Source of the DNA: Obrimoposthia wandeli | Taxonomy: Eukaryota | Direction: 5' to 3' | Length of the DNA stretch: 64,000 nt | Assembly (NCBI GenBank): GCA_977020255.1 | Contig: CDROCS010002814.1 | Location: forward strand, 124,001 to 188,000 | In this document: piece by piece, positions 3,481 through 33,924 of the stretch | Numbering within the stretch: position 1 is the stretch's first letter | How the letters are laid out: the number at the start of each line of letters is the position of its first letter | Translations under genes and position numbers: made by a program | The notes under the pieces: generated by a model | Databases searched by the model: none | What the model saw: the letters and a program-made list of their open reading frames with translations, nothing else | What the model was told of the DNA's origin: nothing

Positions 3481-4591
3481 TTGTTTGCTCCGAAATAGAA
3501 AAAAGAGTGTGGTGATGTTCGCACTGGTTGCCTTCTAGCCACTGCATAACACTGTTAATAATGGCGGGAGCCACTAAGTAGCCGTGTCTAAAGAGACCGT
3601 TGATTGAAACGTGTTTGTCTTGTACTAATACTTGTGCTCGATTATCGGCTAGCGCTGGGCGCAAGTTAGTGCCTTGTTCGATGATTCGCGCTTCTGCAAA
3701 CGCGGGGTTTAAGCTGTACATGGCACTGCACAGCTCTAACATGGATTGCACTGAAACAGGAGAATCATCTTCGCTTTCAATTTGGGTCGCGCCGATAACA
3801 TATTGATCGTTTGGTTTAGGGCACATATACAATTGATAGCGCGGATGCATTAAACGCACAGGGCGGCTCAGTTTCACCTCTGGACAATGAACCCTTAATA
3901 CTTCGCCACGTACTCCTCTTAGGTTGCTTAGCTGTGCTTTAGCGCCCACACCACGACAATCAAATACCCAATCAAACGTTTCACTACCTTTCGCGTGATG
4001 CACTGTATTGTTTTGCACTTGCACAGAGGTGTTATCGATAAGCTTCACCCCTTGCTCAATACTTGCTTTTAATAGCATGGCCATTAAATGTCGATTATCG
4101 ATATTCGCTTCATCAGGTAGCAGCATGCCATCATTAAAGCCGTTACCTAAATTCGGTTCTAATTGCTGGATTTGAGCAGTGTTTAAATCTTGGTACTGCG
4201 CATTAGAGGTGGCGGCTAAATTTTTTACTCTGCGTCTAAAGTGAGTGAGTTCAGGGGTGTCTTGAGGATGGCAAATAATTAAGCTGCCATTATGTTGATA
4301 ATAAAGTTTTTCGTGGCAGGTGGCTTCAAGCTGCCCAATGATGTTAGGCCATAGTTGTAAAGATGTTTCGCCTAAATCAAAAGTATCTAGATCTGATTCT
4401 AGGGTTTCAGAAATAGGTGCAATCATACCGGCGGCGGTAAAAGCAGCGGCTGACAACGAAGCCACATCAAGTGTGTTATTAATTTGATTTGCTTCAAACA
4501 AGCTAACACAGTGCGAATGTCTACTAAGTTGGTGGGCTAGTAGCCTGCCTACTAAGCCTGCACCAATGATGGCAATATTTAGGGTAGTCAT
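3473..4591 (-). CDS. thiO: Glycine oxidase (FAD-dependent)
   Basis: GAGLVG FAD motif, AAGMIAP, LRGVRGE, GLFRHGYL; context with thiSG. Confidence 0.92.
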   Translation of the reverse strand: MTTLNIAIIGAGLVGRLLAHQLSRHSHCVSLFEANQINNTLDVASLSAAAFTAAGMIAPISETLESDLDTFDLGETSLQLWPNIIGQLEATCHEKLYYQHNGSLIICHPQDTPELTHFRRRVKNLAATSNAQYQDLNTAQIQQLEPNLGNGFNDGMLLPDEANIDNRHLMAMLLKASIEQGVKLIDNTSVQVQNNTVHHAKGSETFDWVFDCRGVGAKAQLSNLRGVRGEVLRVHCPEVKLSRPVRLMHPRYQLYMCPKPNDQYVIGATQIESEDDSPVSVQSMLELCSAMYSLNPAFAEARIIEQGTNLRPALADNRAQVLVQDKHVSINGLFRHGYLVAPAIINSVMQWLEGNQCEHHHTLFSISEQTSA

Positions 4592-4898: not shown

Positions 4899-5624
4899 TT
4901 ATCTATTTAATAGGCAGGCTTCTTGGTTGAGTTTAGCGAATGCTTGCTGCATCTTCTGGTGGCATAAGCTCGCGAGTTGTTTTGCGTCGTCAGCACTGTG
5001 GCAATCTTTGGTTTCGATAGGGTCAAAAACTTGAGCAATGACATAACCGTTATTCCATTTATTAAGCTTTATATGGCTCGTTGAGCTCAATACAACCGGA
5101 ACTATCGCCACTTTAGCTTGAATGGCAGTATGAAATGCACCCATTTTAAATGGTAGCAGGCCTTTGCCGTTGCTACGAGTACCCTCTGGGAAAAGCCACA
5201 CACAAAGTTGCTGTGTGCTAAGGCGCAAAGCAACTTGGCTTATGGTATCGCGGGCACGGCTTTTATTTTGGCGATCAATAAGAATGTTCCCTGATAACCA
5301 AAAAAGTGGGCCAAAAAATGGAATCCAGCGAATGCTTTTTTTACCGACACATACCGTATTATTGCTGACCATGGCAGAAATAGTGGCTAAATCGTAAGTG
5401 TTTTGATGGTTGCCTATAAATACTTTGCTAGTGCTGTCTAGATTGGAGTTAAAGCGTTTAATCACTTTGATGCCTATTAAAGGCGCCATTAGCCTACTGA
5501 GGTTACGCGCCAAAATAGGGGTGTTGTTTTTGTGGAAAGGGCGGCACAAGCAAAATAGCAGACCTAAGATACAAAACGAAAAGAACGCAAAAGGAAGAAC
5601 CAAGCAGCGAATCAAAGCAACCAT
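4899..5624 (-). CDS. plsC: 1-acyl-sn-glycerol-3-phosphate acyltransferase
   Basis: NHQNTYD (HX4D) and FPEGTRS motifs. Confidence 0.93.
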   Translation of the reverse strand: MVALIRCLVLPFAFFSFCILGLLFCLCRPFHKNNTPILARNLSRLMAPLIGIKVIKRFNSNLDSTSKVFIGNHQNTYDLATISAMVSNNTVCVGKKSIRWIPFFGPLFWLSGNILIDRQNKSRARDTISQVALRLSTQQLCVWLFPEGTRSNGKGLLPFKMGAFHTAIQAKVAIVPVVLSSTSHIKLNKWNNGYVIAQVFDPIETKDCHSADDAKQLASLCHQKMQQAFAKLNQEACLLNR

Positions 5625-5769
5625 TGTATAAACTCGAGAAATGAAGATGTTAAATATTAACGTGAAGGCGTTATATTGGGATAGTAAAATAATTGATTTA
5701 GTTTAATGTTCTACTCATTTAATAGAGATTAATTAGGCAGAGCCTAAATCATCAGAGGGTTAATTTCCA

Positions 5770-5851
5770 GCCCCTTGGGGCGAATATTAGTAACAACGAT
5801 GCCCCGCTTCACACAGTGAAGCCGAACGAAGTGAGAGGGCTTGCCCCGGGG
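5770..5851. repeat. GC-rich palindrome cluster (REP-like or IS-end relic)
   Basis: GCCCC-TT-GGGGC (5770-5781), GCTTCAC-ACA-GTGAAGC (5806-5822) and CCCCGGGG (5844-5851) in an otherwise AT-rich intergenic region. Confidence 0.45.
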
Positions 5852-6031
5852 ATGTTTATTGCGTTTTAACTTCGATTTTATCTAACTGTTTTTTTAGTGT
5901 ATTAAATATCAAAAAATATGATGACACTGTCGTTATAAATATCTTTAATATAAGATGCTGGGCATGGTTTAAGTAACTTCACTGTTCGTGTAAAAAATCG
6001 TTCTTAATATTGTTTTATAGTAGGTATCAAC

Positions 6032-7027
6032 ATGATAGATTTTTCAGCCATTGCTAGAGTGGATATTACTCATGGTACTACTGCATTGGAATTTGCGCCG
6101 CGTTTGTCAGCTGAACTAGGCTGTAAATTATATTTTAAGCGCGACGATTGTACCGGCTTAGCAGGAGGAGGTAACAAAACACGTAAGTTAGAGTATTTGA
6201 TGGCGGATGCTTTGCAGCAAAAGGCTGACACGATTGTGACATTAGGTGGTTTGCAGTCTAATCATGCTCGCCAAAGCGCCGCTGCTGCTGCAAAGTTTGG
6301 TTTAGGCTGCGAATTAGTGCTAGAAGATGTGGCTGGTACACCTAAAGCTGATTTTTATAGTAATGGCAATTTGCTTTTAAATACTATTTTAGGTGCCAAT
6401 ATTCATAAGTTAGGGGTTGATGCAGATCTGCAAGGATATAGTGACCAGCTGCTAATTGATCTTAAAACGCAAGGTAAAAAGCCCTACTTTATTCCGATAG
6501 GAGGATCAAACGTGATTGGCTCTTTAGGCTATGTCCGTTGCGCACTGGAAATGGTAGAGCAATTAAAAGAGCAAAATATTCACATAGATCAGATTGTCAT
6601 TGCAAGTGGTAGCTCTGGCACACAAGCAGGCTTGTTAGCAGGTTTGATTATGGCAGGTAGTGATATTTCAGTATTGGGTATTAGCGTGAGTAAAACCACT
6701 GAGCATCAAGCACGTTTAGTGACCGAGCTTTTAATAGAGCTACTTAACTTTTTAGAGATCGATCCTGCTTTGGCTGAGGGAAAAGTACATACCAATGGTA
6801 ATTATTTTGGTACAGGCTATGGCGTGAGTACTAAAGCGATGGTTGATGCTGTTAAATTATGTGCCTCTAAAGAGGGGGTTTTGCTGGATCCAGTTTACAC
6901 CGGTAAAGCGATGGCAGGCATGATCGATTTGTTAAAGACGCAACAAATAGATAATAACGCGACTCAGCTTTTCTTACATACAGGTGGTAGTGCAGGGTTA
7001 TTTGCTTACCAAGAAGTTTTTAATTAA
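6032..7027 (+). CDS. dcyD: D-cysteine desulfhydrase (PLP-dependent)
   Basis: KRDDCTG...GGNKTRKLEY, QSNHAR, SGSSGT, LDPVYTGKA motifs. Confidence 0.9.
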   Translation: MIDFSAIARVDITHGTTALEFAPRLSAELGCKLYFKRDDCTGLAGGGNKTRKLEYLMADALQQKADTIVTLGGLQSNHARQSAAAAAKFGLGCELVLEDVAGTPKADFYSNGNLLLNTILGANIHKLGVDADLQGYSDQLLIDLKTQGKKPYFIPIGGSNVIGSLGYVRCALEMVEQLKEQNIHIDQIVIASGSSGTQAGLLAGLIMAGSDISVLGISVSKTTEHQARLVTELLIELLNFLEIDPALAEGKVHTNGNYFGTGYGVSTKAMVDAVKLCASKEGVLLDPVYTGKAMAGMIDLLKTQQIDNNATQLFLHTGGSAGLFAYQEVFN

Positions 7028-7057
7028 TGAATAGATATATGTAAACGTCATTCGCGC

Positions 7058-7246
7058 TTATTTTTTGGGAGTGCGGGTGTTGGCTTTTTTCTTAAATAAA
7101 TTTAATAGTGCATCTTTTGGGCTTTTATCGACTGGCATAGCTGTTTCAAAACGCTGTTTCATTTGATTAAAGCCCGCTTCCTTTTTTTCATGCATAACCC
7201 GATGTTGATGTTCTTTGAAATTGACAACATTGTCTTTATCTTTCAC
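7058..7246 (-). CDS. Small hypothetical protein
   Basis: 62-aa charged ORF alone in the intergenic space; protein-like composition. Confidence 0.55.
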   Translation of the reverse strand: MKDKDNVVNFKEHQHRVMHEKKEAGFNQMKQRFETAMPVDKSPKDALLNLFKKKANTRTPKK

Positions 7247-7511
7247 TTTAAATACCTAGTGTTCATTATCGATAAAAAATTACGCGTAAATCTTTTACAT
7301 AAATATACTAATTCAGCGCATTGATAGCAATATGTAGATTTTATAGAAAGTCAGTGGGGAGTTACTATCATAAAATCTGATGAAGCTTAATAGTACGGTG
7401 ATGTTTAGGATGGCTTATAATACTTGAATTGGAAAACAATAATTTTTAGCGACATTTTAGGAGTTAAACTCCAAAATGTCGCCAAACGGTCGTATTACGT
7501 TTTTTCGGGCA

Positions 7512-8705
7512 TTAGCTTTCTTCGCTAGCAACAGGGGTTGATGCGGGTAAAATAGCATCTACAGGCTGTTGCGAATCAGTTCTTGCGTTACGTAGCGTTT
7601 CAAGAATATCTTGAATTTTAGTTAAACTTGAATTAAATACTGATTGTTGCTCTTTATCAGCATCAATAAAGCGGCTATCTTGCTGTACTAAGCTATCTAG
7701 TAGGCGTTGGCTTACTTTTGAGATATCTTGTAAGAAGTCTAATTCAGGTCTTTGCGTCGCTTGATCAAGATTATTGAGTAAATGCCCTGATAGCTTTCCT
7801 ATGTCAGGTGTCGCATTGTTCTGCACAGTGCTATAACTTGAAGCCGCACTGTATTCCTGAGATTTGGTTAGCTGTAAATTCATCGATGCTAGTTCGGTTT
7901 TATCTAACGTAAACTCTGAAGCACTCTCAAACGCTTTTTGCACGTCGCCGTTAAAAAATTCATTTGATATTTCAGTAACATCAGTAATTAATTTTGAAAT
8001 GGCTTCTAGCTCAGCTGGGTCTAAATCGCCCTGTACTTGAAACTGAAAAGAGCTACTATGGCTTTGGGATAACTCAAAAGAAGCCGCTGAATTCCCCTTG
8101 CCATCACTGACCGCTGCAAAAGAGGCTTCTTGGCTGCTTTGATTGGCAAATAAAATTTTAACAGTATCGCCATCTTGAGTTTTTAGATCTAAAGAAAATG
8201 TTTCAGCGTTACTAAAGCGTTCAGCTGCTGCTACTTGTGTATGGTAAGCACCTATATTTGGCTGAGAGCTGCCAGATGGATTAATAGCATCTAATGCTTT
8301 GAAAGTTAAATCTTCTGTTTTTTCCACGTTGCTAGCAATATCGCCGTTGAGGAGATTGAGACTTTCTAAAATCTCTTTTGCCTCTTCAAAGCCTTTTTTG
8401 ACACCTGCAACTGCCGCATCAAATTTACTTTGAATATCAGCTTCGCTTCGGCCTTCGTTGCGAGCGTTCTGCAATCCTTGCGCTACAAATTTAGAAATTC
8501 TTTCGGCAATTTTGCCTGGGGTGAAATCACTAGTGGCTAAATCTGTTACGTCTTCTTTTTTAAGACCAGGAACATTTTGTGCTAAGCGTTCTAGCATTGC
8601 TTCATTAGCCGTCGCACCAGGATTACGGCTGGTTTCACTCTCGAAAGAGCTTATTTCAGTATGTTGGCGCACATAGGAAGTATTGGAGAAAGTTGTATTA
8701 ATCAT
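7512..8705 (-). CDS. DUF5610-family protein
   Basis: Segment F..AVAGVKKGFEEAKEILESLNLL.GDIAS and C-terminal FQFQVQGDLDPAELEAI resemble DUF5610 proteins (from memory). Confidence 0.7.
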   Translation of the reverse strand: MINTTFSNTSYVRQHTEISSFESETSRNPGATANEAMLERLAQNVPGLKKEDVTDLATSDFTPGKIAERISKFVAQGLQNARNEGRSEADIQSKFDAAVAGVKKGFEEAKEILESLNLLNGDIASNVEKTEDLTFKALDAINPSGSSQPNIGAYHTQVAAAERFSNAETFSLDLKTQDGDTVKILFANQSSQEASFAAVSDGKGNSAASFELSQSHSSSFQFQVQGDLDPAELEAISKLITDVTEISNEFFNGDVQKAFESASEFTLDKTELASMNLQLTKSQEYSAASSYSTVQNNATPDIGKLSGHLLNNLDQATQRPELDFLQDISKVSQRLLDSLVQQDSRFIDADKEQQSVFNSSLTKIQDILETLRNARTDSQQPVDAILPASTPVASEES

Positions 8706-8743
8706 ATCAGAGCCCTCTTAATTTAATTTAATACGATAATTAC

Positions 8744-27250: not shown

Positions 27251-27892
27251 TTAAACGTAGCTTTCATCAATCACTAAGCTAGAAAAATCTTTCCGTGCTT
27301 GCCACTTTTTTTGCTCAAGTTCAGGCGATGCGTAAAATTGATCGACATAGCCTAAGCATAAATATGCCACTAGCTGGTTTTCCGCGGGGGCATTTACAAT
27401 CTCTTTTACTTTTTCAGGATCTAAAATACTTACCCAGCCTAAACCGATATTTAACGCTCTAGCCATTAGCCACATATTTTGCACAGCGCAAACCACGCTG
27501 TAAGGGCCCACTTCAGGCATGTTAGTTTGCCCTAATACCGGTTGTTTGCTCGGCGTATAAAAAACAGCAATGTTGAGGGGAGCTTCATGAATGCCTTCTA
27601 ATTTAAGCGCTGCATATTGTGACTGTTTTGCATCACCGAATTGTTGTTTCTCATTGATGTTTGCCGTTACAAAGGTTTCTTTTATGGCTTGTTTGCGTTC
27701 TTTATCCTTAATAATTACAAATTCCCAAGGTTGAGAAAATCCAACAGATGGGGCGTTGATGGCGGCGAATAAAATTTTATCGAGTGCGCTTTGTGGTATT
27801 TCTTTCGCTAAAAATCGATTGCCGCGAACATCTCTACGATGCAGCATGATTTGCTCTAAAGTTTCGCAATCTTGGTGGTTAAATTTTTTCAT
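27251..27892 (-). CDS. bluB: 5,6-dimethylbenzimidazole synthase (flavin destructase)
   Basis: RRDVRG, APSVGFSQPW, KLEGI.EAP, CAVQNMWL.ARA..IGLGWVS. Confidence 0.88.
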   Translation of the reverse strand: MKKFNHQDCETLEQIMLHRRDVRGNRFLAKEIPQSALDKILFAAINAPSVGFSQPWEFVIIKDKERKQAIKETFVTANINEKQQFGDAKQSQYAALKLEGIHEAPLNIAVFYTPSKQPVLGQTNMPEVGPYSVVCAVQNMWLMARALNIGLGWVSILDPEKVKEIVNAPAENQLVAYLCLGYVDQFYASPELEQKKWQARKDFSSLVIDESYV

Positions 27893-28048: not shown

Positions 28049-29113
28049 TTAATGATGGTAGATGAAACCACCATACATATACTTGGTAGCTTCAGCGCCT
28101 AGTATTAATACTTTATCACCTAAGGATAATTTACCAGAGTGTATCAAGCCGGTTAAGCTAGCCCAAATCGCAGCAGAGCCTAAATTACCCCAATGTTTGG
28201 CATCGTTAACAACTTGTTCTTTTGTTATGTTTAGATGCTGGCTAATTAGGCTGTCAATATGACCATTGGCTTGATGGGGAATGATGTATTTAAAATCGGC
28301 TAATTTATAACCTTGCTGCTCAATAACGTCAATGCCTTTTAGAAATAGCTCAGCTCCTTGTGCTTTAACGTGCGTTGCATTGTGTTCAAAAAAGGGTAAG
28401 CCTTTTTCGCATTTAGCCTGCCCAGATCCGCCCCCTATTAATTGAAAGCCAGGTGGCTTGCCAATGCCAATATGGCCGCTAAAACTATGGCTTATATAGC
28501 TTTGATCAACATCATCCATAGCACTTAAAATAACAGCACTGGCACAGTCTCCCATTTGCACATAATTAATAAGCTGCTGCAAATCGATAAATTCATCATT
28601 GATATCAAAAAACACAGAACCCGTTTCAGATCCAACAATACAAATAGAGCCCATGCTGGGGTTGTGACAAAGCATAGGTACTGCAATTTGCAAGGCACTG
28701 GCAAAACCAGTGCAAGCTTGCCTTAACTCCATATAGGGGCTGCTAGAAGCTAAGCTGTCGCTGATCCATGCAGCGTTTGATGGAAGTAATGTGTGCGGTG
28801 TTGCAGTGTGTGATAGTAAATAACCAAATTGACCAACATCAGCCTTAGCGTTTTTCCTCGCTTGTTTAATCGCATTCACTGACAACTCGATAGCGCTAGG
28901 CGAGGGAGCGGATAAGGCGCTATCCAAACTGCGGCAAAGATAACGGCTTTCTATGCCTAAGCGCTTAGCAATAAACCGCGCTTGTCTAACTGAATTTTTT
29001 GAGCAGAGTAAGCCTAGTTTTTCTAATAAATGGTCATTCTTGATTAACTGATTTGGAAATGCGTTAGCGCAGCTTACTAGTTTTACTTTGCCTGTATTTA
29101 TTATCGCCGTCAT
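28049..29113 (-). CDS. Ketoacyl synthase III (FabH-like) family condensing enzyme
   Basis: Cys-His-Asn triad in RQACTGF, IIPHQAN and HWGNLGSA. Confidence 0.88.
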   Translation of the reverse strand: MTAIINTGKVKLVSCANAFPNQLIKNDHLLEKLGLLCSKNSVRQARFIAKRLGIESRYLCRSLDSALSAPSPSAIELSVNAIKQARKNAKADVGQFGYLLSHTATPHTLLPSNAAWISDSLASSSPYMELRQACTGFASALQIAVPMLCHNPSMGSICIVGSETGSVFFDINDEFIDLQQLINYVQMGDCASAVILSAMDDVDQSYISHSFSGHIGIGKPPGFQLIGGGSGQAKCEKGLPFFEHNATHVKAQGAELFLKGIDVIEQQGYKLADFKYIIPHQANGHIDSLISQHLNITKEQVVNDAKHWGNLGSAAIWASLTGLIHSGKLSLGDKVLILGAEATKYMYGGFIYHH

Positions 29114-29895
29114 TTTATTACTCTACTGGAGTCTGCTGTTTTTAATATGCGTTTAAACAAAATATGGCTATTAATTTGTAAATTTTGCAAGGCGGGTAAC
29201 TGAGTGTTGAGCATATTAACGAGTTGTTGCTGTATTTTTAAATCAATAAAGGTAGGTGTTTTTATAGCGTTTTTAAGCAGCATCGCACTGTGTTTTTTGG
29301 CTATATTTACATGTCGCGCTTCATCTTTTTTGATCAATCGAAAAAGCTCAGCTAGCGGGCTTTGATCAATACTGCTTTTAGCAACAGCGTCCATAAGTAG
29401 GCAAACACAAGTATCAAGCTGCGCGATTACTTGGAAATGCTGTGTAACAGTATTGGTTTGTTGTGCTATAGACGCATAAAAGCGCTGCGCTATGCGTTTT
29501 ATTTTGTGCTGCTCGCTAGCGGCGGGTAATTTATCAAGAATAAACTGCAATGCTTGTTCGTGGATGCGTTCATCTGCTTCAATTTGTTGCAAATAAAGCA
29601 TCGCTTTTTGCTGCTCTAATTCGTTGATAGCTGGGTGATTATCACTCGCTTGGTTTATTCTGCTGCTTTCAGTATTAAAAACGTGTATGGCAGATTGCTC
29701 GCCACACAAGAGTAATGGAATTAAATTTGCCAAAGCGAGTTGCTGTACTTTTGATAGTTCAAACACATCGTTTTTGTGTGTTATTAACCATTGTGCTATT
29801 GGGTGTTGAGCTTTAATAACACAATTGCCGTGACGATTATTTAGGTTGTTTTCACTGTTTGTATGTGATTCAGGCAGAGCAAAGCAGCGCATCAA
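29110..29895 (-). CDS. Ferritin-like diiron-carboxylate protein
   Basis: Helical pattern with E66, E109xxH112, D161, E192xxH195. Confidence 0.75.
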   Translation of the reverse strand: MMRCFALPESHTNSENNLNNRHGNCVIKAQHPIAQWLITHKNDVFELSKVQQLALANLIPLLLCGEQSAIHVFNTESSRINQASDNHPAINELEQQKAMLYLQQIEADERIHEQALQFILDKLPAASEQHKIKRIAQRFYASIAQQTNTVTQHFQVIAQLDTCVCLLMDAVAKSSIDQSPLAELFRLIKKDEARHVNIAKKHSAMLLKNAIKTPTFIDLKIQQQLVNMLNTQLPALQNLQINSHILFKRILKTADSSRVIK

Positions 29896-32069
29896 GAACT
29901 CTTTGCCACAATGGGTGATTTAGTGCTATTGCGCAGTTTTAACAACACAGGCAATAGTAAAATATCGGTCAACAGTGCTAATAAAATAACGATAATGCTA
30001 AAGAGACTAATCTCGAAGGTGGGTTTGAAATCAGAGGTTAAGCCAATAGATAGCGCTAAAATGATAATAAAACTACTGATAATTACGGCGGGAAAAACCT
30101 TTTGTTGTAATTTAGAAAGCGCTTTCATTAGCGTCAGTTTTTTTTGATAGTTATTGAATTTAAAAAGTAAGTGCAATGTATCGTCCACAATAATGCCAAT
30201 AATCATGCCGATCACAACAGTGCTACCTAAGGATAAATACCCTCCTGCTAAACCAAGCGCTCCGTAAGCGATAATAATGGGTAAAAAATTACAGATAAAG
30301 ACCAGTGCACACAGCCACCAAGAGCGTAGTAATAAGCCGCTCACAATGCTGATAATAGTAAGGGCTAATAGCAGAGATGAAAACATGCTGTTCGCGTTGT
30401 TATAACCCACATTGGCAAACAGTAAATCGGGGCTAGTGCCTTTAGAAATACTGAGCCTATCAAGGTTGTTAGCTTCCGCCCAACGGGTAATATCTTTATC
30501 TATTGCAAGTAACTGTCTTGAAGACATTTCTTTAAACCTAAGTTGTATACGTATGCTGTTATCCTGTTTATTTAGATACGTATACAAGCCTGACTTGGAT
30601 GTGTTTTGCTGTAGATAAAAGTTATTTAAATTATTCACATTTAACAAATTGGCACTTGGGAAAACGCTGTTCACATCCTTTAGTTTATTCACATATTCCA
30701 AGAATTGATAAATTTGGCTTAAATCTTCTGCTAACCAAGGAGATGCAGAATCCGTAGCCTCAGGCTGTTTTTGGCGTTCAATAACATAATCGATACTCAC
30801 CACACCATTAAATTTTTCGTTGAGCAAAGTGATTGATTGTCGAAAGTTGTAATCTTTAGGAAAGTACTGATAAACATTATCATTGATGGTTAATTGGCTT
30901 AGCCCAATCAAGCCCATGAGTGCTAAAGCACCGCTTGTTATGATAACTTTTGCGCTATATTTCTTAAAAAAAGCAATGCTAGGGTAATTCCAATTTCTTA
31001 ACACCAAAGATTTTTGATTGATTGCATAAGGTGCGTATCTATACAGCATTGCCTGGAATACACTTAAACTCAGCATCAATGAAAAAATGATGCCTAATGC
31101 AGAAGAAATACCGGTAACCACAATAGGCGGTGATGGGCTGCTTAACAAAAACAAGAAACCTAAAGCAGTTGTAATACAACTCATGCTTAAGGGAATTAAA
31201 TTATCTTTAAAGCTGGTGCGTAACGCAGATTCTCTTGGTTTTCCCGCCGCTAATCGTTGGTAAAACGCGATAGTGCCATGCATGTTTGTGACAAGGCTTA
31301 AGCCTATAATCATAATCGGGGTAAAGGCATTAATAGAGGCTAACGGATACCCTAGCCAACTGATAATGCCAAAGGATGCCATTGTAGCTATTATCCCCAC
31401 GCTTAGCATGGCAAGTGCTACTTTAATGCTGTGAAAAAGCCACGCTAACGCACCGAACATCGTCAACAATAAGAAGGGGACAAATAAGCTAAGATCATGG
31501 CGCACGCTCTCTATGTACGCATTGTTTAATCCCAGCTCACCACTGAGATACAACTTTATATTGTCGTCAGGATAATGACTGCGAGCGGCTTGCAAAACTT
31601 GTTGGTTAAACTTAATGATTTGCTGTGCACTGGTATGATCATCTAATTTTACATCTAACGAGATTAGCGCGGTACTCGCATCAGTGGAGAGTAACCGTGT
31701 TGTGTTTTTATTATTAGTGGCGAATAGATTATTACGCCATCGAAGTTCTGTTAGAAAGCTGTCTATTTTTTGTATTTGTGCAAGCTGTTGTAAATATTGT
31801 AGTAAATTTTTGGAATTTTTATAAAAATTTGCACTCTTAGCTAAAGTGCTATGTTCATTGTGCAATACTAAAATCAGGCTGCTGTGTTCGTTAAAGCTAT
31901 GCTGTTTACTGAGGTAGCTTTTAACCAGTTGATCGCTTTTATCAAAATACACTAAGTAACTGGCGTTTGTTTTGATATTAGCCAAACCAGCTATCGCGCT
32001 CAATATCACGAGCGTGAGTAACACAGATAGTTTTTTGAACGCGGGATAAAGTGGCACAGCTAGCTCCAA
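29892..32069 (-). CDS. MMPL/RND-superfamily transporter
   Basis: Duplicated pattern of TM, periplasmic loop and five TMs; GIIVDDTLH motif; 725 aa. Confidence 0.88.
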   Translation of the reverse strand: MELAVPLYPAFKKLSVLLTLVILSAIAGLANIKTNASYLVYFDKSDQLVKSYLSKQHSFNEHSSLILVLHNEHSTLAKSANFYKNSKNLLQYLQQLAQIQKIDSFLTELRWRNNLFATNNKNTTRLLSTDASTALISLDVKLDDHTSAQQIIKFNQQVLQAARSHYPDDNIKLYLSGELGLNNAYIESVRHDLSLFVPFLLLTMFGALAWLFHSIKVALAMLSVGIIATMASFGIISWLGYPLASINAFTPIMIIGLSLVTNMHGTIAFYQRLAAGKPRESALRTSFKDNLIPLSMSCITTALGFLFLLSSPSPPIVVTGISSALGIIFSLMLSLSVFQAMLYRYAPYAINQKSLVLRNWNYPSIAFFKKYSAKVIITSGALALMGLIGLSQLTINDNVYQYFPKDYNFRQSITLLNEKFNGVVSIDYVIERQKQPEATDSASPWLAEDLSQIYQFLEYVNKLKDVNSVFPSANLLNVNNLNNFYLQQNTSKSGLYTYLNKQDNSIRIQLRFKEMSSRQLLAIDKDITRWAEANNLDRLSISKGTSPDLLFANVGYNNANSMFSSLLLALTIISIVSGLLLRSWWLCALVFICNFLPIIIAYGALGLAGGYLSLGSTVVIGMIIGIIVDDTLHLLFKFNNYQKKLTLMKALSKLQQKVFPAVIISSFIIILALSIGLTSDFKPTFEISLFSIIVILLALLTDILLLPVLLKLRNSTKSPIVAKSS

Positions 32070-32138
32070 AAATAAATATATTCAGTGATTATAAACAATT
32101 GGTTAGATTAATCCACGTGGCATATAATAGAGGCAACT

Positions 32139-32591
32139 ATGCAGGGTAAAGCAATATTATTTTTAAAAGCCAATATCATTATTGGTTTAGTGTTGGCTGT
32201 TTTAGGCTGCTCTTTAAATGACAAAAAAATATATCAAGACGAGAACGGCTTACTTGAAGGTTATGACCCTGTTGCCTATTTTTTAGAAAACCAGGCAGTA
32301 TTGGGAAACAAGCAGTTTAGTCTATTGAGTAAAGAGGGCACTTGGTATTTTTCATCAGCCGATAATAAACAATTATTTGCACAAAACCCCGATAAATATA
32401 AGCCACAGTATGGCGGATACTGCGCATACGCGATGACTTACGGTTTAGTAGTCTCTTCAGATCCGCACGCGTTTTCTATCATAAATGATAAATTGTATTT
32501 AAATTACAGTTTAAGTGTACGTGAAAAATGGCTCAAAAAAATGGAGCAATATATAGTAGAAGCTGATAATAATTGGAAGAAAAAACAATAG
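32139..32591 (+). CDS. YHS-domain family putative lipoprotein
   Basis: GYDPVAYF, PQYGGYCAYA, KLYLNY; lipobox-like VLGC. Confidence 0.85.
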   Translation: MQGKAILFLKANIIIGLVLAVLGCSLNDKKIYQDENGLLEGYDPVAYFLENQAVLGNKQFSLLSKEGTWYFSSADNKQLFAQNPDKYKPQYGGYCAYAMTYGLVVSSDPHAFSIINDKLYLNYSLSVREKWLKKMEQYIVEADNNWKKKQ

Positions 32592-32746: not shown

Positions 32747-33924
32747 CTAGTCAGTCGTCACTTGTGAAAGCGTTTCTGCAAAGGTAGCAACAGCACTATC
32801 TACATCATACAATTTATCTAAGCCGAATAAGCCAATCCTAAAGGTTCTAAAATCATCGCCTTCATCGCATTGTAGAGGAACACCCGCTGCAATTTGCATA
32901 CCTAAAGCCGCAAATTTCTTACCGTTTTGTACTTCACCATCAGTGGTATAGCTTACTACAACACCTGGTGCTTCAAACCCTTTTGCAGCCACACTGTTAA
33001 TGCCTTTACTGGCAAGTAACGCACGAGTTTTATCGCCCAATTGCTGCTGCGCTGTTTTGAGTTTCTCAAAGCCATAAGCTTGCGTTTCTTTCATCACTTG
33101 GGAAAATTTAACTAAGCTATCTGTTGGCATAGTAGCGTGATAGGCGTGTCCACCTTTGCTTCTCATCAATAGCTTCCATGCTTTTGTAATGCCTTGTAAC
33201 GCACGAGTTTTATCTTTTCGCAAAGCCATAGAAACAAAACTGCTACTTTGCCATTTTTAGGTCCTTGCTCTATACGTTCACGTGCTAATTCGTTTAGCAT
33301 CACTAGTGCGCAACAAGGGGAGCCACTCCAGCCTTTTTGTGGAGCACTTATTAATACATCAATGCCCACTTTTTGCATATCAACCCAGATAGTACCTGAG
33401 GCAATACAATCTAACACGAATATCCCGCCAACACTGTGCACGGCCTCTGCTACGCTTTTTAGATAATCATCTGGCAGTATAATGCCAGACGATGTTTCAA
33501 CATGGGGTGCAAAAACGATTGCAGGTTGCTCTTTTTTAATCGCTGCAACCACTTCTTCAATCGGCGCTGGAGTAAATGGCGATTGTGCGCTGCTATCAAT
33601 TGTGCGAGCTTTTAGCACTGTTGTTGAAGCGGCAATGTTGCCCATTTCAAGAATTTGTGTCCAACGAAAACTAAACCAGCCATTGCGTAAGATAAGGCAT
33701 TTTTGTTGATTGGCAAATTGCCTTGCAACTGCTTCCATACCAAACGTGCCGCTGCCCGGTACGATAATAGTGGACTGTGCGTTATATACACTTTTCAAAG
33801 TGCTAGAAATGTCTCTCATTACCGTTTGAAATGAATGGGACATGTGATTGAGTGATCGATCTGTATAAACAACAGAGTATTCGCGTAATCCTTCAGGGTC
33901 AATATTTGGAAAAGATTGATTCAT
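32747..33924 (-). pseudogene. Class V PLP aminotransferase (alanine-glyoxylate/serine-pyruvate type), frame-disrupted near 33155-33265
   Basis: PHVETSSG, VLDCIASG, SAPQKGWS (PLP Lys), GGHAYHATMPTD, FRIGLFGLDKL; split over two frames by a garbled segment. Confidence 0.85.

What the first reader, a model, noticed from the sequence alone, without database searches (positions are those of the whole stretch)
28049..32069. Coupled MMPL exporter / ferritin-like diiron enzyme / KAS III operon: candidate undescribed lipid or natural-product module
Seen: three minus-strand genes, each overlapping the next by 4 nt (29892-29895 and 29110-29113), which implies translational coupling. The KAS III keeps a Cys-His-Asn triad. 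The middle 261-aa protein has the four-helix diiron ligand pattern E66, E109xxH112, D161, E192xxH195. Known: stand-alone KAS III enzymes (OleA, DarB, PqsD, CerJ types) make specialised acyl condensation products; ferritin-like diiron enzymes act as desaturases, N-oxygenases (AurF), halogenases (CylC) or deformylases (ADO); MMPL/RND proteins export lipids. Inference: a condense-oxidise-export pathway. No ACP, acyl-AMP ligase or PKS is adjacent, so the substrates may be CoA thioesters or FAS intermediates. I do not recognise this trio as a characterised cluster.
Basis: partly seen in the sequence, partly recalled or inferred. Interest (0 to 1): 0.82.

Follow-up and report, generated by a model that had tools for sequence, protein, structure and literature searches.

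The report
Uncharacterised KAS III–diiron oxidase lipid export module
A specialised condensing enzyme and a previously unnamed two-iron oxidase are encoded as a coupled gene pair, here with a lipid-type exporter and a periplasmic cysteine protein; the set recurs across many aerobic bacteria and probably makes and exports an unknown oxidised lipid.

Summary
Three minus-strand genes, an MMPL/HAE3-type RND transporter, a 260-aa ferritin-like protein (FER) and a KAS III, lie at 28049-32069 with overlapping stop and start codons.

- **FER:** it has no Pfam or NCBIfam family. Its E, ExxH, D, ExxH residues are invariant in 52 homologues. Its AlphaFold model (pLDDT 90) matches aldehyde-deformylating oxygenase (ADO) and R2lox at Z about 18.
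- **KAS III:** it keeps the Cys-His-Asn triad and scores far below every FabH cut-off. Its structure is nearest to AbyA1, StlD and PqsD.
- **Synteny:** in 80 genomes FER and KAS III are adjacent in 78, and the other two are cut by contig ends. The stop and start overlap by 4 nt in 46.
- **Exporter:** it varies by clade. It is MMPL in marine Gammaproteobacteria, Shewanella and Nitrospira, and an ABC-2 transporter in Sphingomonadales and Burkholderiales. Vibrio has none next to the pair.
a periplasmic YHS-domain protein with an invariant Cys (window 32139-32591). In Sphingomonadales and Paraburkholderia a periplasmic thioredoxin plus CcdA takes its place.

No paper describing the pair was found in the searched library. 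The product is unknown. My best reading is a two-enzyme pathway from primary acyl thioesters to an oxidised, possibly redox-active, lipid that is exported to the envelope. I rate it a new variant of a known kind, with moderately high interest.

The parts
28049..29113 (-). Specialised KAS III (354 aa). The Cys134-His280-Asn310 triad is present. FabH R36 corresponds to the invariant R57. The ACP-docking residue FabH R249 is H285 here and varies across the family.
   Evidence: Pfam ACP_syn_III_C and ACP_syn_III. Every NCBIfam FabH or DarB model scores far below its cut-off. Alignments A2 and A3. AF2 pLDDT 94. VIA-align Z 39.2 to AbyA1, 38.5 to StlD, 38.2 to PqsD and 37.3 to E. coli FabH.
29110..29892 (-). 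FER: a new ferritin-like diiron-carboxylate family protein (260 aa from the ATG at 29892; an alternative TTG start lies at 29895). Its ligands are E65, E108xxH111, D160 and E191xxH194, and it carries a conserved LLCGEQSA motif.
   Evidence: No Pfam or NCBIfam hit. 119 homologues, nearly all named 'hypothetical'. Invariant ligand columns. AF2 pLDDT 90.2. Z 18.5 to ADO and 18.4 to R2lox. 368 clusters at 50% identity among 1.84 billion proteins. Only faint hits to ferritin-clan Pfam families.
29892..32069 (-). RND-superfamily transporter of the MMPL/HAE3 type (725 aa; start TTG 32069 or GTG 32057). It is the presumed exporter.
   Evidence: Pfam MMPL at 54.7 bits, above its cut-off, plus Patched and Sterol-sensing hits. 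HAE3 TIGR00921 at 111.7 bits and HpnN at 69 bits, both below their cut-offs. The nearest solved chains are MmpL4 and MmpL5 at E about 1e-9. It lies upstream of FER in 37 of the 80 scanned genomes, 34 of them with KAS III scored adjacent; these form one starred clade.
32139..32591 (+). Divergently transcribed YHS-domain protein (150 aa). It is predicted to be a periplasmic lipoprotein (lipobox VLGC at residues 21-24) and carries the invariant Cys of the GGYCA motif.
   Evidence: NCBIfam NF041384 at 143 bits against a cut-off of 70. It is adjacent to the module in 40 of the 80 scanned genomes, with either type of exporter. The Cys is kept in 42 of 44 copies and none is Sec. A lipobox or Sec signal peptide is present in most copies.
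32070..32138 (.). A 69-bp divergent intergenic region between the YHS gene and the MMPL operon, presumably carrying both promoters.
   Evidence: Seen from the geometry alone. The consensus scan found no sigma-70-like site here, so this is inferred and not shown.

Best explanation
The locus encodes a conserved, uncharacterised small-lipid or secondary-metabolite module. Its core is two cytoplasmic enzymes made in fixed ratio from translationally coupled genes. One is a specialised KAS III, and the other is a new ferritin-like diiron oxidase with an ADO/R2lox-type fold.

The proposed mechanism is inferred, not shown. The KAS III loads an acyl thioester from fatty-acid metabolism onto Cys134 and carries out a Claisen-type condensation, and possibly a cyclisation as in StlD/DarB, AbyA1 or PqsD. 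No dedicated ACP, ligase or PKS is needed. The diiron enzyme then uses O2 and reducing equivalents to oxidise the hydrophobic product, by hydroxylation, desaturation/aromatisation or oxidative C-C cleavage. The order of the two steps could be the reverse, as with CylC/BrtJ, which act on acyl-ACP before the condensation.

The product would be moved out of the cytoplasmic membrane by the MMPL/HAE3 RND pump, or by an ABC-2 transporter in other clades. In the periplasm it would meet a Cys-containing YHS lipoprotein, or a thioredoxin/CcdA pair in other clades. That pairing suggests the exported molecule is redox-active, or reactive towards thiols or metals, for example a phenolic or quinone-type lipid.
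For: What is shown:
- FER and KAS III are adjacent in 78 of 80 genomes across Gamma-, Beta- and Alphaproteobacteria and Nitrospira. The other two loci are cut by contig ends.
- The FER stop and KAS III start overlap by 4 nt in 46 of 78 loci.
- The exporter type follows the clade: MMPL in one starred clade and ABC-2 in the others, with one change on the KAS III tree.
- Nitrospira copies nest inside the gammaproteobacterial clade and carry the whole YHS-MMPL-FER-KAS set, which points to transfer as a unit.
- YHS is linked to both exporter types. A periplasmic thioredoxin (CxxC) plus CcdA appears in 15 loci, in two different gene orders. None of these has a module-type YHS copy; L082's nearby YHS-like ORF is an unrelated copy.
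- The FER diiron ligands are invariant. The fold matches ADO and R2lox at Z about 18 over 196-224 residues.
- The KAS III triad is invariant. Its nearest structures are condensing and cyclising enzymes of secondary metabolism. All FabH models score far below their cut-offs.
- In four Vibrio loci an FNR/Fre-type flavin reductase gene lies divergently next to FER, which is a plausible electron donor.
- No ACP, ligase or PKS is conserved nearby.
- There are precedents for ferritin-like enzymes acting on acyl thioesters or sitting beside DarB or type III PKS genes: BioE (PMC12915131) and CylC/BrtJ (PMC8406957).
Against: - No product, substrate or phenotype is known, and the chemistry is entirely inferred.
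- The structural preference for AbyA1, StlD and PqsD over FabH is small (Z 39.2 against 37.3).
- The exporter swap is a single event on the tree, so it is only one independent observation.
- Vibrio and two Endozoicomonas-type loci have no adjacent exporter.
- YHS is missing next to the module in half of the scanned loci.
- The third carboxylate ligand is Asp rather than the usual Glu, and metal content is untested, so the site could be Mn/Fe or could have a non-oxygenase role.
- No RNA data were available to show co-transcription, and no consensus promoter was found.
Confidence: 0.6

Rival explanations
1. Envelope-lipid remodelling. The KAS III acts as an alternative initiator of fatty-acid synthesis and FER as a soluble acyl-ACP desaturase or hydroxylase. 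Together they make an unusual fatty acid or membrane lipid, and the HpnN-like RND pump carries it to the outer membrane.
For: The MMPL protein gives sub-threshold hits to HAE3 and HpnN. Acyl-ACP desaturases appear among the ferritin-fold matches. FabH R36, the CoA-adenine contact, corresponds to the invariant R57. Several loci come from cold habitats, including an ice metagenome, Shewanella gelidimarina, Sphingomonas psychrolutea and an Antarctic Sphingomonas.
Against: The ACP-docking residue R249 is not conserved. Scores lie far below the FabH cut-offs and the branch from FabH is very long. Desaturases rank well below ADO and R2lox. This reading does not explain the periplasmic Cys or thioredoxin partners.
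Confidence: 0.17
2. A hydrocarbon or ketone pathway. The KAS III makes a beta-keto or head-to-head condensed acid, as OleA does, and FER, like ADO, removes a one-carbon unit oxidatively to give an alkane, alkene or ketone that is then exported.
For: ADO is the top structural match (Z 18.5, about 196 of 218 residues). ADO works in a complex with the enzyme that hands it its substrate (6jzu). OleA is a close structural relative of the KAS III (Z 37).
Against: There is no sequence-level match to the ADO family. No acyl-ACP reductase or OleBCD genes are nearby. Shewanella already carries a separate Ole pathway (from general knowledge, not tested here). A neutral hydrocarbon would not explain the periplasmic thiol proteins.
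Confidence: 0.1
3. A lipidic metallophore or metal-handling system. The pair makes a small lipophilic chelator for Cu or Fe, which is exported as MmpL4/5 export mycobactins and handled in the periplasm by a metal-binding YHS protein or by a ScsC/TlpA-like thioredoxin with CcdA.
For: YHS is described in Pfam as a presumed metal-binding (possibly copper) domain (and from general knowledge). The nearest solved relatives of the transporter are the siderophore exporters MmpL4 and MmpL5. A TonB-dependent receptor lies upstream in Shewanella gelidimarina. Thioredoxin/CcdA pairs take part in periplasmic copper handling in other systems (from general knowledge).
Against: The TonB receptor occurs in only one locus. 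No metal-responsive regulator or uptake system is conserved nearby. The MmpL4/5 match is weak and confined to the membrane domain.
Confidence: 0.08
4. There is no functional link. The KAS III is housekeeping FabH and the neighbouring genes are coincidental.
For: Sources annotate the KAS III generically as '3-oxoacyl-ACP synthase III'.
Against: The pair is adjacent in 78 of 80 genomes from four bacterial classes or phyla, with conserved 4-nt overlaps. FabH models score well under half of their cut-offs. The locus is not in a plsX-fabH-fabD-fabG-acpP context such as the one in E. coli.
Confidence: 0.02

Closest known systems
DarAB(C) / StlCDE dialkylresorcinol-cyclohexanedione pathway
   Same: A stand-alone KAS III (DarB/StlD) condenses fatty-acyl-derived thioesters, and one partner enzyme (DarA/StlC) oxidises the product. 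Both are very small clusters fed from primary metabolism. StlD is the second-best structural match of the KAS III (Z 38.5).
   Different: The KAS III scores 68 bits against the 450-bit cut-off of the StlD/DarB model. FER matches no NCBIfam model at all. No ACP gene is present. The oxidase here is a diiron protein, and the module adds an exporter and a periplasmic thiol protein.
Cyanobacterial aldehyde-deformylating oxygenase (ADO, with AAR)
   Same: ADO is the best structural match of FER (Z 18.5, rmsd 3.0 Å, about 196 residues). Both have diiron ligands on helices 1, 2, 4 and 5 and a partner enzyme that supplies a fatty-acyl-derived substrate.
   Different: There is no detectable sequence-family membership. 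The third ligand is Asp rather than Glu. The partner is a KAS III rather than an acyl-ACP reductase. The host range is proteobacteria and Nitrospira.
CylC/BrtJ dimetal-carboxylate halogenases in DarAB or type III PKS clusters
   Same: A ferritin-like dimetal enzyme modifies an acyl chain in a cluster that also holds a KAS III-type or type III PKS condensing enzyme (PMC8406957).
   Different: Those enzymes are mostly cyanobacterial and sit in larger clusters with acyl-activating enzymes and an ACP. Homology of FER to CylC could not be tested here.
BioE diiron oxygenase (biotin precursor pathway)
   Same: It is a ferritin-like, ADO-like diiron enzyme that acts on long-chain acyl-ACP or acyl-CoA and needs O2 and a reductant (PMC12915131).
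   Different: The ligand spacing differs: E41/E68xxH71/E140/E170xxH173 in CpBioE against E65/E108xxH111/D160/E191xxH194 here. BioE has a biotin context and the regulator BioL. There are no biotin genes at this locus.
HpnN / MmpL lipid exporters of the RND superfamily
   Same: The transporter belongs to the Pfam MMPL family, and in both cases a lipid-type cargo is made by neighbouring genes.
   Different: Scores lie far below the HpnN and HAE3 cut-offs, and the match to MmpL4/5 is only E about 1e-9. No hopanoid or mycobactin genes are present.

Membership tests
Housekeeping FabH (KAS III, TIGR00747 / NF006829) | Score above the curated model cut-off | tested here: not met
   99.0 bits against 292.1, and 108.6 bits against 249.
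Housekeeping FabH (KAS III, TIGR00747 / NF006829) | Cys-His-Asn catalytic triad | tested here: met
   C134, H280 and N310 align with E. coli C112, H244 and N274 and are invariant in 45 sequences.
Housekeeping FabH (KAS III, TIGR00747 / NF006829) | ACP-docking Arg249 and a fab-cluster context | tested here: not met
   Position 249 is H285 here and is H, R, Y or A across the family. No plsX, fabD, fabG or acpP gene is nearby, unlike the E. coli locus.
StlD/DarB ketosynthase family (NF005293, NF053539) | Score above the cut-off, with DarA and ACP partners | tested here: not met
   68 bits against 450, and 67.6 bits against 550. The partner protein matches no NCBIfam model. No ACP gene is present.
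Ferritin-like diiron-carboxylate superfamily | Two E...ExxH half-sites on a four-helix core | tested here: met
   E65, E108xxH111, D160 and E191xxH194 are invariant. They lie on the long model helices 48-82, 91-121, 149-171 and 179-208. Z 17-18.5 to ADO, R2lox, R2 and MMOH. The third carboxylate is Asp, not Glu.
ADO family (aldehyde-deformylating oxygenase) | Sequence-family membership and an AAR partner | tested here: not met
   No Pfam family reaches its threshold. The family profile finds no ADO chain in the PDB at E up to 10. No reductase partner is conserved.
Diiron oxygenase activity (bound Fe2, O2 activation) | Metal content and O2-dependent turnover | not testable with these tools
   This needs ICP-MS, spectroscopy and enzyme assays.
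RND superfamily, MMPL family (PF03176) | Pfam gathering score | tested here: met
   54.7 bits against 20.5.
HpnN / HAE3 (TIGR03480, TIGR00921) | Curated cut-off | tested here: not met
   69.4 bits against 751.85, and 111.7 bits against 351.9.
YHS domain-containing (seleno)protein (NF041384) | Curated cut-off and the conserved Cys/Sec position | tested here: met
   143.3 bits against 70. The GGYCA Cys is kept in 42 of 44 module-linked copies, always as Cys.
CylC/BrtJ dimetal-carboxylate halogenases | Sequence homology to CylC | not tested
Only the literature context was used.

The most novel reading that the evidence does not exclude
The FER-KAS III pair makes a so far unknown class of redox-active lipid, for example an alkyl-quinol or phenolic lipid. 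The lipid is exported and then cycled or bound in the periplasm by a dedicated Cys (elsewhere Sec) YHS protein, or by a thioredoxin/CcdA relay. If so, this is a new envelope redox, antioxidant or metal-handling system shared by marine Gammaproteobacteria, Nitrospira, Sphingomonadales and Burkholderiales. It would also give the large orphan family of YHS (seleno)proteins its first function.
Probability: 0.2. Interest if true: 0.85.

Novelty: new variant of a known kind. Interest (0 to 1): 0.62.

Why it matters
- A two-enzyme pathway with no ACP, ligase or PKS is small enough to test directly by heterologous expression. It is also conserved in hundreds of sequence clusters from ecologically important aerobes, including Shewanella, Vibrio, Endozoicomonas, Woeseiaceae, Nitrospira, Sphingomonas and Undibacterium.
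- It defines a new family of ferritin-like diiron enzymes. That superfamily keeps yielding unusual C-H and C-C chemistry, as in ADO, CylC, BioE and AurF.
- It links this family to a periplasmic YHS Cys protein whose wider family has no known function.
- Identifying the product would add a new bacterial lipid or signal and probably a new diiron reaction.

Tried and rejected
- **FER sequence searches:** single-sequence and profile searches of FER against the PDB found only de novo designed diiron bundles and a marginal R2lox hit. These support the motif but give no functional lead.
- **Foldseek:** E-values against the PDB and Swiss-Prot models were weak (0.02-0.1). VIA-align was needed to show the fold clearly. 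The ESM Atlas and AFDB cluster searches returned only unnamed relatives.
- **Literature:** searches for the gene combination found nothing specific.
- **Expression data:** no RNA-seq run holds the locus, so read laying was not used and co-transcription is untested.
- **BluB:** the downstream gene (27251-27892) was considered as a fourth member and rejected, because it is conserved only in the closest relative, L006.
- **FNR-like reductase:** this is confined to one Vibrio clade, so it is only weak support for an electron donor.
- **Other neighbours:** clustering of neighbour genes found no further conserved partner beyond YHS, MMPL, ABC-2 and thioredoxin/CcdA.
- **Promoter scan:** it found fewer sites than the shuffled controls and none in the divergent intergenic region.


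Full report
**1. The observation**

The window carries three consecutive minus-strand ORFs at 29892-32069, 29110-29895 and 28049-29113.
- The KAS III start ATG (29113-29111) overlaps the stop TGA of the middle gene (29112-29110) as ATGA.
- At the upstream junction the sequence reads cTTGATGc.
- Homologues begin M-R-C-F, so the ATG at 29892 is the likelier start, and this overlaps the MMPL stop by one base.
- G+C content (0.38-0.40) matches the flanks, so there is no sign of a recent island.
- The neighbouring genes are a 2Fe-2S protein, a FadB-like enzyme, a chemoreceptor, BluB, an aminotransferase, ETF alpha and beta, PurU and a dimethylglycine-dehydrogenase-like protein. None is an ACP, an acyl-AMP ligase or a PKS.

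**2. The three proteins**

The 725-aa protein is an RND transporter of the MMPL family (Pfam 54.7 bits against a cut-off of 20.5).
- It gives sub-threshold hits to HAE3 and HpnN.
- Its nearest solved relatives are the mycobacterial MmpL4 and MmpL5, at only E about 1e-9.

The 354-aa protein is a KAS III by Pfam, but it is not housekeeping FabH.
- Every curated FabH, DarB or related model scores far below its cut-off. The best is 108.6 bits against 249.
- Aligned with E. coli FabH (fetched), it is 24% identical.
- The triad C112/H244/N274 corresponds to C134/H280/N310. The CoA-contact residue R36 corresponds to R57. All four are invariant in 45 family members.
- The ACP-docking residue R249 is H285 here and varies across the family.
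- The AF2 model (pLDDT 94.4) is nearest to AbyA1, the tetronate-forming enzyme (Z 39.2), then StlD (38.5) and PqsD (38.2). E. coli FabH (37.3), BioZ, OleA and type III PKSs follow. The margin over FabH is small, but the sequence search agrees, giving AbyA1 (5by7) as its second-best hit with the only full-length alignment.

The 260-aa protein (FER) matches no Pfam or NCBIfam model and no PDB sequence.
- Its 119 word-index homologues are almost all named 'hypothetical protein'.
- An exhaustive profile search found only 368 clusters at 50% identity among 1.84 billion proteins, 302 of them below E = 1e-10. This is a discrete, fairly small family.
- In a 52-sequence alignment E65, E108, H111, D160, E191 and H194 are invariant, as is an LLCGEQSA motif around E65.
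- The AF2 model (pLDDT 90.2, pTM 0.88) places the ligands on four long helices.
- Foldseek E-values were weak. VIA-align gives Z 18.5 to cyanobacterial ADO, 18.4 to R2lox, and about 17 to RNR R2 and the methane and toluene monooxygenase hydroxylases.
- Individual family members give faint, sub-threshold hits to Rubrerythrin, DUF455, R2, AurF, COQ7 and PaaA.
- FER is therefore a new family within the ferritin-like diiron-carboxylate clan. Its fold is closest to the two members that bind long alkyl chains.

**3. Conservation of the gene set**

Contig look-ups showed the same MMPL-FER-KAS III order in Aliamphritea hakodatensis, Shewanella gelidimarina, Shewanella woodyi and two metagenome-assembled genomes. 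I then scanned one genome per species and obtained 80 loci, which I scored by tblastn.
- KAS III lies directly downstream of FER in 78 of 80 loci. The two exceptions end at contig edges.
- The FER stop and KAS III start overlap by 4 nt in 46 of 78 loci.
- Clustering of all neighbouring ORFs gave, after FER and KAS III, only four recurrent partners: YHS, MMPL, an ABC ATPase and an ABC-2 permease. A thioredoxin/CcdA pair was found later.

**4. Architectures of the module**

| Type | Organisms | Gene set |
|---|---|---|
| A | Marine Gammaproteobacteria, Shewanella, Woeseiaceae, Nitrospira | YHS + MMPL-FER-KAS |
| B | Burkholderiales (Undibacterium, Rhizobacter), Nevskia | YHS + FER-KAS-ABC ATPase-ABC-2 permease |
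| C | Sphingomonadales, one Paraburkholderia | FER-KAS-ABC-ABC2-periplasmic thioredoxin (CxxC)-CcdA, or thioredoxin-CcdA-FER-KAS |
| D | Vibrio | FER-KAS only; in four loci a divergent FNR/Fre-like flavin reductase |

- In type C a module-type YHS copy is never present nearby. L082 carries only an unrelated, degenerate YHS-like ORF far upstream.
- On a KAS III tree rooted with E. coli FabH, the family sits on a very long branch.
- The MMPL-type loci form one clade with full support. The exporter type changes once on the tree and the periplasmic partner changes twice.
- The Nitrospira copies nest within the gammaproteobacterial clade with the whole four-gene set, which indicates transfer as a unit.
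- Because the exporter swap is a single event, I count it as one independent observation, not many.

**5. The fourth partner**

The divergently transcribed gene at 32139-32591 encodes a member of the NCBIfam 'YHS domain-containing (seleno)protein' family (143 bits against a cut-off of 70).
- It has a lipoprotein signal (VLGC).
- Module-linked copies keep the Cys of the GGYCA motif in 42 of 44 cases, and none has Sec at that position.
- The copies carry a lipobox in the MMPL clade and a Sec-type signal peptide in Burkholderiales.
- No solved or characterised relative was found.
- In another clade this partner is replaced by a secreted thioredoxin plus the membrane electron conduit CcdA. That points to thiol chemistry in the periplasm as part of the system. 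This is an inference from gene context only.

**6. Interpretation**

What is shown is a tightly coupled pair of cytoplasmic enzymes, a variable exporter, a periplasmic thiol protein, and the absence of a dedicated carrier protein or activating enzyme.

From this I infer that the KAS III takes acyl thioesters from primary metabolism and condenses, and perhaps cyclises, them. I infer that FER uses O2 to oxidise the hydrophobic product or the acyl substrate, and that the product is exported. Precedents exist for each step:
- DarB/StlD with the oxidising partner DarA/StlC.
- ADO working with AAR (6jzu).
- BioE acting on acyl-ACP or acyl-CoA (PMC12915131).
- CylC/BrtJ sitting in DarAB or type III PKS clusters (PMC8406957).

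The periplasmic Cys or thioredoxin partners fit best with a redox-active product, or one reactive towards thiols or metals. I give the general model a probability of 0.6 and the specific redox-lipid version about 0.2. The rivals are membrane fatty-acid remodelling, a hydrocarbon or ketone pathway, and a lipidic metallophore. They are listed with their evidence in the Rival explanations section. The 'housekeeping FabH and coincidence' reading is excluded.

**7. Novelty**

Four literature searches for the gene combination found nothing, and the databases name FER only as hypothetical. The components belong to known superfamilies, and the logic of condensing enzyme, oxidase and exporter is familiar. 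What is new is the FER family, the fixed FER-KAS III pairing and the periplasmic thiol partner. I therefore rate the locus a new variant of a known kind.

**8. Limits**

- No RNA data were available.
- No promoter was detected.
- The models were predicted as monomers only.
- No coordinates were available for pocket analysis.
- CylC and BioE sequences were not at hand for a direct comparison.

Noticed in passing
window 32747-33924 (-): A class-V aminotransferase (PhnW/AepZ-like, sub-threshold) appears split into two overlapping ORFs in different frames, 33166-33924 (252 aa, N-terminal part) and 32747-33229 (160 aa, no Pfam hit). This is probably a frameshift, from either a pseudogene or a sequencing error.
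   Followed up: partly
window 27251-27892 (-): A BluB gene (5,6-dimethylbenzimidazole synthase; TIGR02476, 229 bits against a cut-off of 150) lies 156 nt downstream of the KAS III. It is conserved in that position only in the closest relative (L006), so it is not part of the module.
   Followed up: yes
L031, L036, L037, L046, L047 (Nitrospira loci): The Nitrospira copies of the whole YHS-MMPL-FER-KAS set nest inside the gammaproteobacterial clade of the KAS III tree, next to Woeseiaceae. This suggests horizontal transfer of the module as a unit.
   Followed up: partly
L013 about 4179-4583 (Endozoicomonas numazuensis); L064 and L065 about 7001-8726 (Vibrio ishigakensis and Vibrio sp. JCM 19236): The YHS copy in L013 contains in-frame stops. 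The FER hit in L064 and L065 and the KAS III hit in L065 cover only part of the query. These may be decayed copies or draft-assembly frameshifts.
   Followed up: no
L030, L033, L040, L087 (Vibrio), about 5335-6774: An FNR/Fre-type flavin reductase gene (FAD_binding_6 plus NAD_binding_1) is transcribed divergently from FER. It is a candidate electron donor for the diiron site and might be useful for in vitro assays.
   Followed up: partly
L003 1414-3264 (Shewanella gelidimarina): A TonB-dependent receptor gene lies just upstream of the MMPL gene in this one locus.
   Followed up: no
Loci: Many holders of the module come from cold habitats, including an ice metagenome, Shewanella gelidimarina, Sphingomonas psychrolutea, Sphingomonas sp. 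Ant H11 and a palsa MAG. This may simply reflect sampling bias.
   Followed up: no
L005 8027-11243: In one Cellvibrionales MAG the module is followed by DUF35/ChsH2-type OB-fold, thiolase-like and AMP-binding genes. This is not conserved in other loci.
   Followed up: no
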